Positions 3,588 to 42,854 of a stretch of DNA of 64,000 nt are shown in pieces. How positions within the stretch are numbered: the stretch's first letter is position 1; each line of letters starts with the position of its first letter. The position numbers and the translations under genes are program-made. The notes under the pieces are model-generated. The model had not been told where the DNA came from. It ran no database searches and was given only the letters and a program-made list of their open reading frames with translations. The stretch spans positions 124,001 to 188,000 of the IMG/VR virus record IMGVR_UViG_3300037010_003311. One strand, 5' to 3'.

Positions 3588-6500
3588 TTAATGTTTTGTA
3601 TACAATGGTGCAAATTGTACATCTTTAAATTTAGGATAACTATAAACCTTTTCAATGTAATCCCATAATGTTTCAGAATTCTTTTGATTATTTTTAATCT
3701 GTTCAAGCTGTTGGGCTAAAACATTTAATCCTTGGTTTGCGGTGTTTGCTGCAGCCAGGGCAACAGCATTCGACTGCTCTAGCAATTGGTTGCTAGCCTT
3801 TAATTGTTCATTATGTGTTTTCAATTGTGCCATAGTTTCTTCATGTTGTGCTTTAACCTGTTTATGCGAATCAACTACCGCTTTTTTAACTTTATCAACC
3901 CCTGAACTTGTTGTATCAGTCGCACTAGTTCCACTACCATTACCAGAAATACTAGTAACTAAAGAATCTATAGTTGATGTTGTGGTTTTAATCGCATCAT
4001 CGGTTGCTTTAGCTTGAGCAGTTACTCCACCTTCTATATAACTACCAGTTAAATTTAAAATGGTATTGCTTATTATTTTATCGAGTGCGGCATCTAAATC
4101 ACCACTAGAATAATGGCTCTTAAATGGCACATGTTTTTTCAGTTGAGCTCGTAAATCATTGATTTCTGCTCTTGTAATTTTTCCATCGGCTGACGCCTTT
4201 TTATACCACGGCCCAGTTACTCCATTCATATAATTGTATTCTGAAGTTAAATATTGTTGAAGGGATTTAATCTTTTTATCTGATTGATTAGAGGTTACAA
4301 AATTTTTTAAAGATGCTGGCATATTAGAAAAATAGTTTTGTTCCCAAAAATCTTCTTGTATTTTGCCAACCCCTTTCATATTTAATAATTGTTTTAACCA
4401 GGCTCGTTGGGAGTTAGATAAAACTTTACCATTTTTTGCAGCATCTACCGCATCATCTATTAATGATTTATGTTGTATATAAAATGAGTCGTTTTGAATA
4501 CTTTTATCTGCTAAAATTTTATCTAATACTTGTCCAGCCACTCCAGCTTTTCTATCAAATTGGTAGGCACCTATAGCATTTAAAGTGCCTTTATCATCCC
4601 CCGATTCATTATAGCGAATGTTTCCATAATCGGCATTTGCTGTTCCAGTTTCTCGTAAATGTAATATCGATTTAAAATCACCTTTACCAAATTGTGCAGT
4701 AAATTGATCAATTCTCTTGCCACTGACTACAGCATCTGTATTCGTTTGCCCAGTACCTAAACCGGCTGCATCTTTTATAGTAGATGATATCTGTTCACCC
4801 ATATAGGTTATAACTTTACCGAGTGATAAAAATGGACCAAATATAACTGAACCAAGAATACCACCAATCAACATACCAATAATACTATCTTCCCCAAAAA
4901 TCATACTTGATACTTTCATACCCTCTTTTACACCAGGCATATTTTCTTTAAGCCAACCACCAGTTTTTTTAGCAGCTCCTTTAAAATCAAAATTGCTAAT
5001 AGCTTTAGAAATTTTTACTATACCAGCTTCTGCATAATTACCTAAGATACCACCAATACCTGCTCCAAGTACTGATCCAAGACCTGGCAGTAAGTATGTA
5101 CCAAGTATACCACCAACTCCAGCTCCAATAGTAATTCCTAGATTATTTTTTACCATATTACTAATAGCTTCCCAAGTGGTAGCTTCAGAACCATCACTAT
5201 TAGTTTCAAATTGTTTAAACCAGTCTTGGAATTTATCTTGCGCTAATTTACCAATCATTGATCCTACCATCATGCCCGGATAACCACCAATTGCAAAACC
5301 TGCTGCACCACCAAGTATTGAACCAGCGTCTTTAATTAGGTTCCCACTAACCGATTTTATTTTATCTAAAAAGCTACGGTCTTTACCAGTCTTTGGATCA
5401 GTATCTGGTTCCATTAAATAACCAAGTACAGCATCACCACCAAGAGCTAGTAACCCAGCTTTACCCATACCAGCAACCTTACCACCAAGATATGAATTAG
5501 CAGATACGGCAGCTCTACCTGCCGCCCTACCCGCTTCTTTTAAAGTCGCTTTAGTATTAGTACGGACTTGTTTAAACCAGTTCCCTTTTTCTTTATGTTC
5601 CTCTAGCTTTTTAACATTTTCTCCATGCGCGGATGCTGCTTCACTCATTTTAGCTTTAGCTTCATTTAACTGAACATTGGCATCAAATATTGCTTGCTGT
5701 TTAGCTTCCTTAGCTGCTTTACTTTTAGCTTCGGTTGCATTAACCCTATCCAGATGGTCTTGTGCACTATTAATCGCGTCCATCTTACCTTTTAAATGTT
5801 CTTTAGTTTTATCGGCTTCTGCTTTAAGAGTAGCTTCTTTAATATGTCTGGCATTAACCATATCCATAATGGAGCCACCAAAATTTTTAAGACCTGGTAT
5901 TTTATTAACTAGGAAAGATGCAGTCTTACCAACAACGGCAGCTAGAATCATACCAGATACCGCAAGATGACCCCTCACCATGTCGGTTAATGATTTATAT
6001 TTATCATTCATTTTAGATAAAGCCGCAGCCAGCCCGAAAGCACCAAGCATTAAAGGCATTGATGTTAAGAAATTATCATCACCTCGTTCTTTCTTAGTCT
6101 TTGGATCGAGAAAACTAGCTATTCTAGCTAACCAGCGGATCTGTTCAGTTTGAGCCGTATTATTTTTCTTTAATTCCTCGGTCTGAGCTTCTTCATTTAT
6201 AAAAGCTTTAGCTTGAGCATCCTTTTGTTCTTGTGCTTGGGCTTTCTGTAAGTCAGTTTCATTCCCCCCAGCTAGACCTAGATGGTTGCGGCGATCAGCT
6301 TCTAAGAATGAAACCATCTCTGGAAATTTAGAAACTTGCCATTTAGGAATAACATGTTCGTCTTCGTGGACTACCCCAACTGGTTTTTCACCAGAGCTAT
6401 CAGGTTTAGTACCAGGTTTTGCTTTACCAGTATCACCCCCATCATTAAAACCTCTTCCGCCAGAGGCCATATGTGCCATAAGGGGATCAAATTCGTTTAC

Positions 6501-40020: not shown

Positions 40021-40548
40021 CTATTTATTCTCTCTTCTATCATGAATCAATAATTTTTTATTTGTAACTATTTGATCAGTCATTTTAAATAATTGGCTTG
40101 GGCTAAAAATATTATCATGTGGAAGACAACAAGTTGAATAACCGTAAGTAATATTATTTATAGAACTTAATTTATCTTCTAATTCCGAAATTTGGAATTC
40201 TTTTAATAATATTCCAAATTCGTCACCACCAATACGAAATATTTCCGAGCCGATACAATCTCTAAATGTGGATTCTATATTACTAGATACCTCTTTTATT
40301 AATTTATCACCAGCGTCGAAACCATCTAAACGATTAATATTATGTAAATTATTAATATCAATCAGCACTAATAAAAAATTTTTCTTCTCATAAGTACATT
40401 GTTCGTATAATGTATTAAGATAATTATCAAAATCTTTACGTAATTTAAAACCAGTAAGAAAATCATATTTATAACGTTTAACTTCTTCTTTTAGATATTG
40501 TACTTCATCTATTAAATTAAAGAAATTTTGTTCATTAAATTCAATCAT
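40021..40548 (-). CDS. GGDEF-domain protein (putative diguanylate cyclase)
   Basis: DFLTG, LIDINNL, GFDAGDKLI, FRIGGDEF; likely start ATG 40548 with AGGGAG RBS. Confidence 0.9.
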   Translation of the reverse strand: MIEFNEQNFFNLIDEVQYLKEEVKRYKYDFLTGFKLRKDFDNYLNTLYEQCTYEKKNFLLVLIDINNLHNINRLDGFDAGDKLIKEVSSNIESTFRDCIGSEIFRIGGDEFGILLKEFQISELEDKLSSINNITYGYSTCCLPHDNIFSPSQLFKMTDQIVTNKKLLIHDRRENK

Positions 40549-40560
40549 ATAATACTCCCT

Positions 40561-40643
40561 ATGACAAGAAAAATAGATTAACCAAGCAGTTGTTGGATCT
40601 GATGGGGAAGAATGGATTGTCATCAACTGCTTGGTTAATCTAT
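40561..40643 (-). terminator. Terminator/attenuator immediately upstream of GGDEF RBS
   Basis: Perfect 20-bp stem (40573-40592/40624-40643) followed by TTTTCTTGTCA, a variant of the TTTTCCTGTCG tail. Confidence 0.7.
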
Positions 40644-40654
40644 CTAAATTCGAG

Positions 40655-40835
40655 GGGGACCTAGTAGCTACTAGGTCCCCTGGTACATATGTTTATACTC
40701 TAAAACAAACTCCGTACCACTTCTAAAGGCATGAACTAACATAAGGATGCTCGTTCATCTACCTTTGGCCAAAGATTATAGACTAGCTTTAGGATTTTGA
40801 ATTGGATCACTAAATCCATCGTCGCTACCCGGACT
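40655..40835 (-). ncRNA. Candidate multi-hairpin RNA / leader
   Basis: Non-coding and GC-richer than flanks; successive stems AAAGGT/GCCTTT + ATGAAC/GTTCAT, TGGTAC/GTACCA + GTTTGT/ATAAAC, and a 26-bp perfect palindrome at 40655-40680. Mismatches resolve as G-U on the minus strand. Confidence 0.5.
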
Positions 40836-41327: not shown

Positions 41328-42065
41328 TCATACTATACATCTTGGTTTATTCGTTTTAACCGATCCAATATTAAGTATTTTATACAATTCGTTATCTTGA
41401 GTCATTATGTGAGTGCACCCTTCATCGATGGCAATTGCTAATTCATTTTGCCAAATAGTACCATCCCAAGCGTTAGTCTCTGGTAAATTAACAGAAGCCA
41501 TAAAAATACGTTTAGTTTCATCGTTTGGTGAAACTTCATCATTGTTGTCTTCTACAATGTACCAATCTTCAGCAAGTACATCGGTTTGTGATGCTAACCA
41601 CGGTACAATTTTGTTATCTGCGGTTTTCATATCAATATGGGCATTGTAATTGATTTCGGTACCTTCCGGATAAATACCAAGTAACGGTGCACGATTCACT
41701 TTAAACGTACTACCGGGTACAAGAAATAAAAACATACCTTTGCCATTCCAGCCAGTTCTAGCAACTTTATTACCCGTCTTTAATGCTTGGATGGCTTCCC
41801 CAAAATTTAAACCACTTGCAATTGGACTAGGTTCTGATTCCACAAATGGTTCAAAATTAGCATGGAAGTATTCTTTTGTCACTAACCATTGATCATCATG
41901 ATTCCTTGGGTTACGAGCTACCATGTCTCCCTGTTTAGGTTTATTGCCCACTGTGTCTACTGGCATCGAAATCGTTGATATATCTAATCCAAACATAACT
42001 TCTTCAAAAGTTACTGGTCTAAGTTCAGCTATTGCTGATCTTTTATATTTTTTAAAATTTTTCAT
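41328..42065 (-). CDS. Tad2/DUF2829 anti-defence sponge domain fused to extra N- and C-terminal domains
   Basis: LNFGEAIQALKTGNKVARTGWNGKGMFL...VPWLASQTDVLAEDW is the DUF2829/Tad2 signature. Confidence 0.85.
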   Translation of the reverse strand: MKNFKKYKRSAIAELRPVTFEEVMFGLDISTISMPVDTVGNKPKQGDMVARNPRNHDDQWLVTKEYFHANFEPFVESEPSPIASGLNFGEAIQALKTGNKVARTGWNGKGMFLFLVPGSTFKVNRAPLLGIYPEGTEINYNAHIDMKTADNKIVPWLASQTDVLAEDWYIVEDNNDEVSPNDETKRIFMASVNLPETNAWDGTIWQNELAIAIDEGCTHIMTQDNELYKILNIGSVKTNKPRCIV

Positions 42066-42135: not shown

Positions 42136-42231
42136 CTAATTATGGTTTGTGGTGACACCAATTTTATCTTGTATTAAACCATCAAGTGTATCTCGATCAA
42201 AATCGCGCAAATTATTTTTCATATTATCCAT
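42136..42231 (-). CDS. 31-aa small ORF (possibly a gene remnant)
   Basis: Strong GGAGG RBS and upstream promoter motif; MDNMKNNLRDFDRDTLDGLIQDKIGVTTNHN. Confidence 0.4.
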   Translation of the reverse strand: MDNMKNNLRDFDRDTLDGLIQDKIGVTTNHN

Positions 42232-42336
42232 CTTATGTCCTCCCTTTTAATTAATTACATAAATATTTCTATATTAGAAAAAATAGTAAAACAACTATTG
42301 ATAAAATGAGGTACGTCTCAAAAATTAGGATTTTCG

Positions 42337-42402
42337 CGACAGGAAAACTTGCGACTACTAACATAAAGTGAGGAGACAATATGTTAGCAGTTGCAAGTTT
42401 TC
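42337..42402 (-). terminator. Terminator of tRNA transcript with C/U-rich loop
   Basis: ~22-bp stem, loop TTGTCTCCTCACTT, ending TTTTCCTGTCG. Confidence 0.75.
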
Positions 42403-42410
42403 AATATTAA

Positions 42411-42486
42411 TGGTGGAGAATAGCGGGGTCGAACCGCTGACCTACTGCTTGCAAGGCAGTCGCTCTCCCAACTGAGCTAATTCCCC
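42411..42486 (-). tRNA. tRNA-Ala(TGC)
   Basis: GGGGAAT TA GCTC..GAGC G ACTGC CT TGC AA GCAGT..AGCGG TTCGACC CCGCT ATTCTCC A CCA; G3-U70 pair; encoded CCA. Confidence 0.97.
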
Positions 42487-42506
42487 ATTAAAATATGCAA
42501 TTCAAG

Positions 42507-42618
42507 TGTCTAAGTATAACTTAATCATTAAGAATTTTATACAACAAGGAAATCATAAAGGAGGACAAAGAATGGGAAATCAAAGAACGGCAACATGGAT
42601 TAAGGTTATACTTAGACA
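42507..42618 (-). ncRNA. Candidate sRNA: 20-bp closing stem with ~70-nt C/U-rich loop
   Basis: TGTCTAAGTATAAC(C)TTAATC stem; the loop contains TTTGTCCTCCTTTATGATTTCCTT; AACAAAT motif directly upstream. Confidence 0.5.
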
Positions 42619-42693
42619 ACTATTTGTTATCACTATTTAAAATACCAAGCAAGTGCAACTTAGGTCTTATTTTGTGTAGGAACTATTTAAACA

Positions 42694-42773
42694 TGGCTGG
42701 GGAATGTAGGATTCAAACCTACAATCTCTATATTGTAAATATAGAGCTCTAATCATTTGGAGTAAATTTTCCC
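42694..42773 (-). pseudogene. Degenerate tRNA-Val(TAC)-like element
   Basis: Intact anticodon stem CTATA-TTTACAA-TATAG and T stem GTAGG/CCTAC, but T loop TTTGAAT and mispaired acceptor and D stems. Confidence 0.65.
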
Positions 42774-42778
42774 ATTAT

Positions 42779-42854
42779 TGGATCGGAGTGGAGGGTTCGA
42801 ACCTCCGACACGCAGCGCCAAAAGCTGCTGTTCTACCAACTGAACTAACTCCGA
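42779..42854 (-). tRNA. tRNA-Gln(TTG)
   Basis: TCGGAGT TA GTTC..GAAC A GCAGC TT TTG GC GCTGC..GGAGG TTCGAAC CCTCC ACTCCGA T CCA; U1-A72 pair. Confidence 0.93.

What the first reader, a model, noticed from the sequence alone, without database searches (positions are those of the whole stretch)
42337..42628. Hairpin RNAs with anti-Shine-Dalgarno loops flanking tRNA-Ala
Seen: a 20-bp stem (42507-42618) closes a ~70-nt loop with TTTGTCCTCCTTTATGATTTCCTT, starting just after the AACAAAT motif. The terminator after tRNA-Ala has loop TTGTCTCCTCACTT, and the 40573 terminator loop is also C/U-rich. TGTCCTCCTTT can pair over 11 nt (one G-U) with the RBS AAGGGAGGACA of the small ORF at 42231. Known: C/U-loop sRNAs such as RepG/CJnc190 repress G-rich translation starts. 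Inference: late phage sRNAs released by tRNA processing that silence early or host mRNAs. If transcribed from the plus strand instead, the multiple GGA motifs would suit a CsrA sponge.
Basis: partly seen in the sequence, partly recalled or inferred. Interest (0 to 1): 0.6.

Follow-up and report, generated by a model that had tools for sequence, protein, structure and literature searches.

The report
Phage RNA hairpins showing anti-ribosome-site motif
Next to a tRNA gene, an uncultured giant phage carries a conserved structured non-coding RNA whose open loop copies the ribosome's mRNA-docking sequence, so it probably blocks ribosome-binding sites, though no expression data exist.

Summary
The hairpins exist as described and are more than chance. 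They belong to the minus strand, like all genes, the three tRNAs and every regulatory motif in the window. H3 (42507-42618) starts 3 nt after a promoter-like AACAAAT. H2 (42343-42402) is the terminator of the tRNA-Ala unit, one of a phage-wide family (hairpin + UUUUCCUGUCG). H1 (40573-40643) is a third such terminator.

Related uncultured jumbo phages keep H3 at the same place, at the head of the tRNA island. Seven of eight elements, this phage's included, have a significant closing helix with compensatory changes. Five of the seven loops carry single-stranded CUCCUU (expected 0.1), matching the 16S rRNA 3' end over 8-10 nt in four. H2 and H1 keep their C/U loop motifs in relatives while the stems change.

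The best partner of the H3 loop in 64 kb is the RBS of the 31-aa ORF at 42231 (p about 0.01-0.05). No conserved target was found in relatives, and no RNA data exist.

The plus-strand readings (CsrA sponge, small ORF) are not supported. A BoxA-like reading fits this phage only. Release by tRNA processing holds for only two of the eight phages.

Verdict: a real, new phage ncRNA family. A base-pairing anti-SD role is plausible but unproven.

The parts
42622..42628 (-). AACAAAT promoter-like motif directly upstream of H3
   Evidence: It occurs 10 times in the window, always on the minus strand, against 34 expected. Five of the ten sites lie 25-50 nt upstream of start codons of the terminase and other large ORFs in the structural-gene block, and the site ahead of the major head gene lies about 100 nt upstream. 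Relatives keep it at the same place. The site fits the AR9 late-promoter form AACA-N6-T-G, which would put the start at the first stem base (PMC5312081). That fit is a lead only.
42507..42618 (-). H3: long-range closing helix (5' arm 42598-42618, 3' arm 42507-42527) around a pyrimidine-rich loop of about 70 nt
   Evidence: Folding. The helix beats 100/100 shuffles, and seven of the eight elements compared (this one and six of seven relatives) have an equivalent helix 1-5 nt after AACAAAT, whereas the other nine AACAAAT sites of the window have none. Compensatory pairs are seen.
42557..42567 (-). UGUCCUCCUUU in the H3 loop; CCUCCUUU equals the 3' end of Bacillales 16S rRNA
   Evidence: Unpaired probability 0.92. 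CUCCUU is present in 5 of 7 homologous loops against 0.11 expected, Poisson p about 1e-7. The 16S 3' end was read. The family-wide match to the 16S end beats 300/300 shuffles.
42580..42588 (-). GUUCUUUGA in the H3 loop, identical to the core of the Firmicute rrn BoxA-position element
   Evidence: TGTTCTTTGAAAAC lies in the rrn leader or the 16S-23S spacer of Bacillus, Neobacillus and Mycoplasmopsis. The match is notable only in this phage and is not significant family-wide.
42411..42486 (-). tRNA-Ala(UGC) with encoded CCA, 20 nt after H3 and 8 nt before H2
   Evidence: ARAGORN and Rfam, 68.6 bits.
42337..42402 (-). H2: 23-bp hairpin with loop UUGUCUCCUCACUU and tail UUUUCCUGUCG; the terminator of the tRNA-Ala unit
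   Evidence: Folding. The tail motif occurs 6 times in the window, always on the minus strand and always intergenic. About 25 such terminators in window and relatives have loops of 3-6 nt. H2 and L089 6773 are the exceptions, with CUCCUC loops and unrelated stems.
42265..42273 (-). TATAGAAAT, a second promoter-like motif, about 35 nt upstream of the small ORF
   Evidence: Eight exact copies lie on the minus strand. At least five of them lie about 30-35 nt upstream of start codons. Relatives have it downstream of H3.
42136..42246 (-). 31-aa ORF (42136-42231) with the strongest SD in the window, AAGGGAGGACA (42236-42246); predicted partner of the H3 loop
   Evidence: SD survey of 38 genes. Best duplex in the whole sense strand, -23.3 kcal/mol, z = -5.3. 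Shuffle tests give p = 0.014 and 0.048. The protein is on record in the collection.
40560..40643 (-). H1: 23-bp hairpin, loop with CCAUUCUUCCCCAUC, tail UUUUUCUUGUCAU, just upstream of the GGDEF gene
   Evidence: The homologue in L085 (1839-1907) has two compensatory pair changes and keeps the loop motif AAUCCAUUyUUCCC.
42698..42854 (-). tRNA-Val(UAC) and tRNA-Gln(UUG), upstream of the AACAAAT motif
   Evidence: The tRNA-Val scores below the Rfam gathering score and is skipped in a variant contig.

Best explanation
The window is part of a 226.7-kb uncultured jumbo phage from microbial mat and sediment samples. On the minus strand, a promoter-like AACAAAT (42622-42628) would drive one short non-coding unit: H3, then tRNA-Ala, then the H2 terminator. 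H3 is a member of a previously undescribed structured RNA family that marks the 5' edge of the tRNA/ncRNA island in this phage clade. A 14-20 bp helix joins its first transcribed bases to a distal segment. That helix holds open a 50-130 nt pyrimidine-rich loop, which in most members shows a single-stranded copy of the 16S rRNA anti-Shine-Dalgarno sequence (CCUCCUU). The most likely mechanism (inferred) is base pairing with Shine-Dalgarno regions, which would block translation initiation. In this phage the preferred partner would be the unusually strong RBS of the 31-aa ORF at 42231. Pairing could be in trans, after RNase P frees H3 from the tRNA-Ala precursor, or in cis on transcripts that read through H2. 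H2 and H1 are intrinsic terminators of the phage's own type. Unlike the other terminators, they have two-turn stems and C/U-rich loops, as seen in the terminator hairpins of known C-rich-loop regulators. Shown here: the anatomy, the strand, conservation, covariation, motif enrichment and the complementarity. Inferred: transcription, processing, stability and any regulatory effect.
For: Strand and unit: all 53 ORFs of at least 100 aa but 3 short overlapping ones, all 3 tRNAs, all 10 AACAAAT and all 6 TTTTCCTGTCG lie on the minus strand.
Conservation of H3: seven relatives were found through two neighbouring genes. Each has AACAAAT at the same position, at the 3' end of or just after the epimerase gene. 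Six of the seven relatives, and this phage, then have a helix that no more than 1 of 100 shuffles equals. The stems show compensatory changes (A-U to G-C and others) or wholesale replacement.
Motif: CUCCUU is in 5 of 7 loops against 0.11 expected, with unpaired probability 0.84-1.0. The summed match to the 16S 3' end beats 300/300 shuffles, while BoxA consensus matches do not. 11 of 17 sense-strand CUCCUU lie in the 13.6% of sequence that is non-coding, p about 2e-6.
Target: the best duplex in 64 kb is the RBS of ORF 42231 and covers the SD up to the AUG. That ORF has the strongest SD of 38 genes surveyed.
H2 and H1: the loop motifs are kept while the stems differ in L089 and L085.
Precedent: C-rich or UCCC loops that occlude RBSs, including terminator hairpins, and a tRNA 3' spacer acting as a regulatory RNA (PMC8383071).
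Against: There is no transcript evidence: no RNA run holds this sequence. Two of seven H3 elements (L089, L093) lack CUCCUU, and an eighth locus (L095) has only a short hairpin. No conserved or RBS-located partner was found in the 6-16 kb available for each relative. The window target is only moderately significant (p 0.014 to 0.048). A generic anti-SD would also touch the phage's own mRNAs, although these mostly have weak AAGGA sites. The relatives are not phylogenetically independent. H2 has no RBS-located partner among its best duplexes.
Confidence: 0.4

Rival explanations
1. The elements are purely structural or processing features. H3 would be a 5'-terminal stem that stabilises or directs processing of the late tRNA transcript. 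Its two-turn helix, like those of H2 and H1, would be an RNase III-type site or a 5'/3' protection element. H2 and H1 would simply be terminators. The loop sequences would have no sequence-specific role.
For: The helix is the most conserved feature, whereas loop length (47-127 nt) and sequence vary widely, and no motif is shared by all seven loops above composition-matched chance. H2 and H1 carry the phage's terminator tail. Only H1, H2 and H3 have stems of at least 20 bp.
Against: CUCCUU is strongly enriched and always unpaired in H3 loops. H2 and H1 keep their loop motifs while the stems change. About 25 other terminators manage with loops of 3-6 nt.
Confidence: 0.25
2. H3 is a cis-acting processive antitermination leader, of the rrn/lambda BoxA-Nus type or the put type. 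It would let RNA polymerase read through the long untranslated tRNA/ncRNA island.
For: It is promoter-proximal at the head of an untranslated island in all relatives. The window loop has GUUCUUUGA, identical to 9 nt of the element at the BoxA position of Firmicute rrn leaders and spacers. CCUCCUUAAG loosely resembles GYUCUUUAANA (PMC5725501).
Against: Family-wide matches to either BoxA form are no better than shuffles (p 0.07 and 0.44), whereas the 16S-end match is. This reading does not explain C/U loops inside terminators. The host and the polymerase that uses AACAAAT are unknown, and no RNA polymerase subunit is seen in the window.
Confidence: 0.12
3. The C/U motifs are binding sites for a protein (host S1, or a KH- or cold-shock-like or phage RNA-binding protein). 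The RNAs would then act as a protein sponge or assembly platform rather than by base pairing.
For: The motif recurs in other non-coding RNAs of the island, with three copies 33-36 nt apart in L087. The syntenic 121-aa gene has a sub-threshold KH hit (E = 0.003).
Against: The KH hit is below Pfam's cut-off, and the structure model was unusable (pLDDT 41). The motif equals the anti-SD, which gives pairing a ready partner.
Confidence: 0.1
4. The functional strand is the plus strand. The product would be an antisense RNA with GGA motifs (a CsrA sponge), or an mRNA for the 22-aa ORF at 42572-42640, which has a perfect SD (type I toxin-like).
For: The plus strand reads AAAGGAGG, 7 nt, ATG, with a 22-codon ORF whose 5' and 3' parts pair.
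Against: No gene, promoter-like or terminator-like motif of the phage lies on the plus strand. Antisense ORFs are absent or unrelated in relatives. Only 3 GGA lie in one loop. The peptide has no long hydrophobic stretch.
Confidence: 0.04
5. H3 plus tRNA-Ala is a relic of a captured host rRNA operon with the 16S body deleted. It would keep the leader BoxA, the processing stem, the 16S 3' end and the spacer tRNA-Ala(UGC).
For: The order in the window (BoxA-like 9-mer, CCUCCUUU, tRNA-Ala(UGC)) mirrors that of an rrn operon. tRNA-Ile(GAU), the other usual spacer tRNA, is in the islands of L083, L087 and L092.
Against: There is no similarity to 16S beyond 8-10 nt. H3 is not next to tRNA-Ala in most relatives. 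Origin would not by itself explain function.
Confidence: 0.04

Closest known systems
C/U-rich-loop base-pairing sRNAs of low-GC bacteria and Epsilonproteobacteria (RsaE and the UCCC class, LhrC, RNAIII hairpins H7/H13/H14, RepG)
   Same: Unpaired C/U-rich motifs sit in hairpin loops, including terminator hairpins, and are complementary to G-rich SD regions. More than one such site can occur per locus (PMC8383071).
   Different: There is no sequence or Rfam relationship. These RNAs are phage-encoded. The motif is a longer copy of the 16S anti-SD (8-10 nt) held in a very large loop by a long-range helix. No expression or target has been shown.
tRNA-precursor spacer RNAs with regulatory roles (3'ETS-leuZ of E. 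coli)
   Same: They are non-coding segments of a tRNA transcription unit lying between promoter, tRNA and terminator, and would be freed by tRNA maturation (PMC8383071).
   Different: 3'ETS-leuZ sponges sRNAs through Hfq. Here the predicted partners are SD sites. Linkage to a tRNA holds in only two of the eight phages.
Small stable RNAs C and D in the phage T4 tRNA gene cluster (from general knowledge, not tested here)
   Same: They are phage-encoded structured non-coding RNAs embedded in a tRNA cluster.
   Different: Their function is unknown. No similarity of H3 or H2 to any of 50,697 phage records was found beyond the tRNA itself.
BoxA/Nus antitermination leaders of rrn operons and lambda nut sites
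   Same: They are promoter-proximal elements of an untranslated operon with a pyrimidine-rich single-stranded motif. The window has a 9-nt identity to the Firmicute element.
   Different: The consensus is not met family-wide. A long closing helix is not part of those leaders.

Membership tests
C/U-rich-loop anti-SD sRNAs (RsaE/LhrC/RepG kind) | Unpaired C/U-rich motif displayed in a hairpin loop | tested here: met
   Unpaired probability 0.84-1.0 for CUCCUU in five H3 loops. H2 and H1 loops.
C/U-rich-loop anti-SD sRNAs (RsaE/LhrC/RepG kind) | Complementarity of the motif to the RBS of a target mRNA | tested here: inconclusive
   In the window, the best partner in 64 kb is the RBS of ORF 42231, p 0.014-0.048. 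No consistent RBS partner was found in relatives.
C/U-rich-loop anti-SD sRNAs (RsaE/LhrC/RepG kind) | Accumulates as a discrete small RNA | not testable with these tools
   No RNA run holds the sequence.
C/U-rich-loop anti-SD sRNAs (RsaE/LhrC/RepG kind) | Sequence or structure homology to a described family | tested here: not met
   No Rfam match apart from tRNAs in the window or in relatives.
tRNA-spacer-derived regulatory RNA (3'ETS-leuZ kind) | Lies within a tRNA transcription unit, between promoter, tRNA and terminator | tested here: met
   AACAAAT, H3, tRNA-Ala, then H2 with the terminator tail. Transcription itself is inferred.
tRNA-spacer-derived regulatory RNA (3'ETS-leuZ kind) | Linkage to the tRNA is the conserved feature | tested here: not met
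   Only the window and L093 have a tRNA directly after H3. Elsewhere a second promoter-like motif and other elements intervene.
Intrinsic terminator (H2, H1) | Stable hairpin followed by a U-tract on the transcribed strand at the end of a unit | tested here: met
   Shared tail UUUUCCUGUCG, strand-specific, intergenic, and conserved in relatives.
BoxA/Nus antitermination leader | Match to a BoxA consensus | tested here: not met
   Window only: 9-nt core. Family-wide matches are no better than shuffles. The consensus comes from PMC5725501 and from rrn loci.
CsrA/RsmA sponge (plus strand) | Transcribed from the plus strand, with many GGA motifs in hairpin loops | tested here: not met
   All signals are on the minus strand. 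Only 3 GGA lie in one loop. Transcription was not measured.
Small ORF / type I toxin (plus strand) | A conserved small ORF with an RBS | tested here: not met
   Antisense ORFs are absent or unrelated in the six relatives.

The most novel reading that the evidence does not exclude
A clade of uncultured jumbo phages makes, from a late-type promoter, RNAs that display a copy of the ribosome's own anti-Shine-Dalgarno tail. These RNAs would act as decoys that occupy strong Shine-Dalgarno sites, mainly on host mRNAs and selected early phage mRNAs. The phage's own weak-SD messages would stay free. This would be an RNA-based way to redirect translation.
Probability: 0.12. Interest if true: 0.8.

Novelty: new variant of a known kind. 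Interest (0 to 1): 0.5.

Why it matters
Few regulatory RNAs are known from lytic phages, and none that mimics the 16S anti-SD. If H3 and its companions do occlude ribosome-binding sites, they would show a cheap RNA route for a phage to time or bias translation. They would also give a handle on the poorly understood non-coding islands around phage tRNA genes. Even without the function, the work defines a conserved RNA family. It also defines the promoter-like motifs (AACAAAT, TATAGAAAT) and the terminator signal (hairpin + UUUUCCUGUCG) of an uncultured jumbo-phage clade, which helps annotation.

Tried and rejected
- GenBank phages: no similarity beyond the tRNA.
- IMG/VR: it holds only the source contig.
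- JGI metagenome scan with the 121-aa neighbour: nothing found.
- Sequencing runs: four DNA runs and no RNA run. The laid contigs showed divergent variants of the H3 region, but their differences were cut from the listing.
- Exact-protein look-ups: they gave only identical copies of this phage.
- MAFFT alignment of H3 homologues: misaligned because loop lengths vary. Pairs were therefore counted by script, and no covariance model was built.
- Target search in relatives: no consistent partner.
- Motif shared by all seven loops: none above chance.
- BoxA: rejected family-wide.
- Sense and antisense small ORFs in H3: not conserved.
- 121-aa neighbour as a KH-like protein: the model was too poor to use (pLDDT 41), so no fold search was made.
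- Large ORFs of the window: no RNA polymerase subunits found.

Full report
CONTEXT. The window is part of IMGVR_UViG_3300037010_003311, a 226,657-bp contig. Near-identical DNA occurs in four microbial-mat and sediment DNA runs. The window encodes a large terminase, a major head protein and a tail sheath. G+C is about 30%. All ORFs of at least 100 aa, apart from three short overlapping ones, lie on the minus strand. So do the three tRNA genes: Ala 42411-42486, Val 42698-42772 and Gln 42779-42854. No GenBank phage resembles the region beyond the tRNA itself.

OBSERVATION. On the minus strand the order is as follows.
- AACAAAT at 42628-42622.
- H3 at 42618-42507: 14 perfect pairs, a 1-nt bulge, then 6 more pairs, closing a loop of about 70 nt.
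- A 20-nt spacer, then tRNA-Ala with an encoded CCA, then an 8-nt spacer.
- H2 at 42402-42343: a 23-bp stem with a 14-nt loop UUGUCUCCUCACUU, -31 kcal/mol, z = -9.
- The tail UUUUCCUGUCG.

A third long hairpin, H1 (40643-40573, 25-nt loop containing CCAUUCUUCCCCAUC), lies just upstream of a GGDEF gene. These three are the strongest non-palindromic inverted repeats in the 64 kb.

STRAND AND SIGNALS.
- AACAAAT occurs ten times against 34 expected, always on the minus strand. Five of the ten sites lie 25-50 nt upstream of start codons of the terminase and other large ORFs in the structural-gene block. The site ahead of the major head gene lies about 100 nt upstream.
- The motif recalls the late promoter of jumbo phage AR9, AACA-N6-T-A/G, whose last base is the start site (PMC5312081). 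The H3 site fits that form, which would place the start on the first base of the stem. Only half of the window's sites fit, and I found no polymerase subunit in the window, so this is a lead only.
- TTTTCCTGTCG occurs six times, always on the minus strand, intergenic and right after a hairpin. It is evidently the phage's terminator signature.
- A second promoter-like motif, TATAGAAAT, lies about 30-35 nt upstream of several start codons, including the 31-aa ORF at 42231.
- Nothing comparable lies on the plus strand.

RELATIVES. Homologues of two neighbouring genes (a 121-aa protein and an epimerase) led to contigs of related uncultured phages with 37-87% protein identity: L083/84, L085/86, L087/88, L089, L090/91, L092, L093/94 and L095. 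They share the promoter-like and terminator motifs.

H3 IS CONSERVED.
- In every relative that covers the site, AACAAAT sits at or just after the epimerase stop, at the 5' edge of the tRNA/ncRNA island.
- In this phage and in six of the seven relatives, a helix of 10-17 contiguous pairs (-15 to -24 kcal/mol) begins 1-5 nt downstream and closes a loop of 47-127 nt. No more than 1 of 100 shuffles equals it.
- The nine other AACAAAT sites of the window have no such helix.
- The stems fall into three sequence types. Within and between types there are compensatory changes (A-U to G-C, U-A to G-C, A-U to U-A), and L093 has a wholly different stem.
- L095 has only a short hairpin at this position.

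THE LOOP MOTIF.
- CUCCUU is present in five of seven loops (850 nt in all) against 0.11 expected (Poisson p about 1e-7). It is predicted unpaired in each (0.84-1.0).
- The loops are otherwise unalignable. No motif is shared by all seven above composition-matched chance.
- Bacillales 16S rRNA ends in GGAUCACCUCCUUUCU. The window loop shares CCUCCUUU with it, and L087 shares CACCUCCUU.
- L092 matches the E. coli-type 16S end UCACCUCCUUA in 10 of 11 positions and L083 shares CCUCCUUA with it. I took that form from memory and did not read it from a locus.
- The summed match of the seven loops to the 16S end exceeds all 300 shuffles.
- Matches to the gamma-proteobacterial BoxA consensus (PMC5725501) do not exceed shuffles (p 0.44). 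Nor do matches to the Firmicute rrn BoxA-position element, which I located in rrn leaders and spacers (p 0.07).
- CCUCCU occurs once on the sense strand of the whole window, in this loop.
- Across 133 kb of window and relatives, 11 of 17 sense-strand CUCCUU lie in the 13.6% that is non-coding, all inside the tRNA/ncRNA islands.

TARGET.
- Sliding the 30-nt core of the H3 loop along the sense strand of the window gives its best duplex at the RBS of the 31-aa ORF at 42231 (-23.3 kcal/mol, z = -5.3). The next best is -19.9.
- The pairing comprises 11 + 4 + 5 bp and covers the SD through the A of the AUG.
- Among 39 RBS regions it beats 98.6% of shuffled cores, and 95% of cores in which only the flanks were shuffled.
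- That ORF has the strongest SD of 38 genes surveyed. Most phage genes have only AAGGA.
- In the 6-16 kb available for each relative, no consistent RBS partner appears.

H2 AND H1.
- Of about 25 terminators of the hairpin + UUUUCCUGUCG type in window and relatives, nearly all have 10-15 bp stems and loops of 3-6 nt.
- The exceptions are H2 (loop core CUCCUC), the terminator that closes the tRNA cluster of L089 (loop UGCCUCCUCG, with an unrelated stem), H1, and the H1 homologue in L085.
- H1 and its L085 homologue differ by two compensatory pair changes while keeping AAUCCAUUyUUCCC in the loop.

REJECTED READINGS.
- The plus-strand 22-aa ORF with a perfect SD (42572-40) is simply the complement of the anti-SD-like loop. 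Antisense and sense ORFs in H3 are absent or unrelated in relatives.
- A CsrA sponge would need plus-strand transcription, for which there is no signal.
- Rfam has no family for H3, H2 or H1, nor for the other non-coding parts of the islands.

INTERPRETATION.
- Shown: a conserved, strand-specific, structured non-coding element at the head of the tRNA island, which presents an anti-SD-like motif, and two atypical terminators with C/U-rich loops.
- Inferred: these are transcribed, H3 accumulates (freed by RNase P in this phage and in L093), and the loops pair with SD regions to repress translation. Known C-rich-loop regulators work this way, including some whose terminator hairpin carries the seed, and a tRNA spacer RNA has a known regulatory role (PMC8383071).
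- A cis version is also possible. Late transcripts reading through H2 would carry both H3 and the ORF 42231 SD. Transcripts from the TATAGAAAT site would lack H3.
- Weaknesses: no RNA data, the motif is missing in two of seven members, and no conserved target was found.
- Rivals are a purely structural or processing role, a BoxA- or put-like antitermination leader, a protein-binding role, and an rrn-operon relic. The last is suggested by the order in the window: a BoxA-like 9-mer, then the 16S-end 8-mer, then tRNA-Ala(UGC).

NOVELTY. This is a new RNA family in an uncultured jumbo-phage clade whose presumed mechanism is of a known kind. Interest is moderate. It would be high if the RNAs prove to be anti-SD decoys.

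Noticed in passing
window 10885, 24830, 41240, 42265, 44086, 49976, 51622, 63555 (minus strand): TATAGAAAT is a second strand-specific promoter-like motif. At least five of the eight copies lie about 30-35 nt upstream of start codons, and relatives have it too. Together with AACAAAT it suggests two temporal promoter classes.
   Followed up: partly
window 11098, 12770, 24927, 38067, 42347, 63615 (minus strand); also L083, L085, L087, L089, L090, L092, L093: The terminator signature, a hairpin followed by UUUUCCUGUCG, is conserved across the clade. It is often followed within 20-60 nt by AACAAAT, forming a terminator-promoter cassette.
   Followed up: yes
L083:6690-7300, L085:795-1330, L087:8400-9075: A large conserved non-coding region (400-600 nt) in relatives, with internal hairpins and one to three further CUCCUU motifs. 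It has no Rfam match and is absent from the window.
   Followed up: partly
window 42698-42772: tRNA-Val(UAC) scores below Rfam's gathering score (27.1 bits). A variant contig in one sediment run replaces 42686-42773 with 7 nt, so this tRNA is dispensable or decaying.
   Followed up: no
window 41328-42065 and 40021-40548: A Tad2-like (Thoeris anti-defence 2) domain sits inside a 245-aa protein here, against 100-113 aa in relatives. A GGDEF-domain gene lies next to it, and relatives add a response-regulator receiver gene.
   Followed up: no
window 40655-40680: A perfect 26-nt palindrome (GGGGACCUAGUAG and its complement) lies between a conserved non-coding stretch and H1. It is absent from the L085 homologue and varies among metagenome contigs.
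   Followed up: no
L087:8159-8272, L089:6308-6403, L090:6346-6435: A small, very basic ORF of 29-37 aa (MAKQVNPRGK...) lies among the tRNAs of relatives. It is absent from the window.
   Followed up: no
L093:5430-5640 and 6015-6110: Further structured non-coding stretches lie in the L093 tRNA island. They include ACCUCCUUUGUAUGAU, which closely resembles the window's H3 motif, and a hairpin with GCUCCUC.
   Followed up: no
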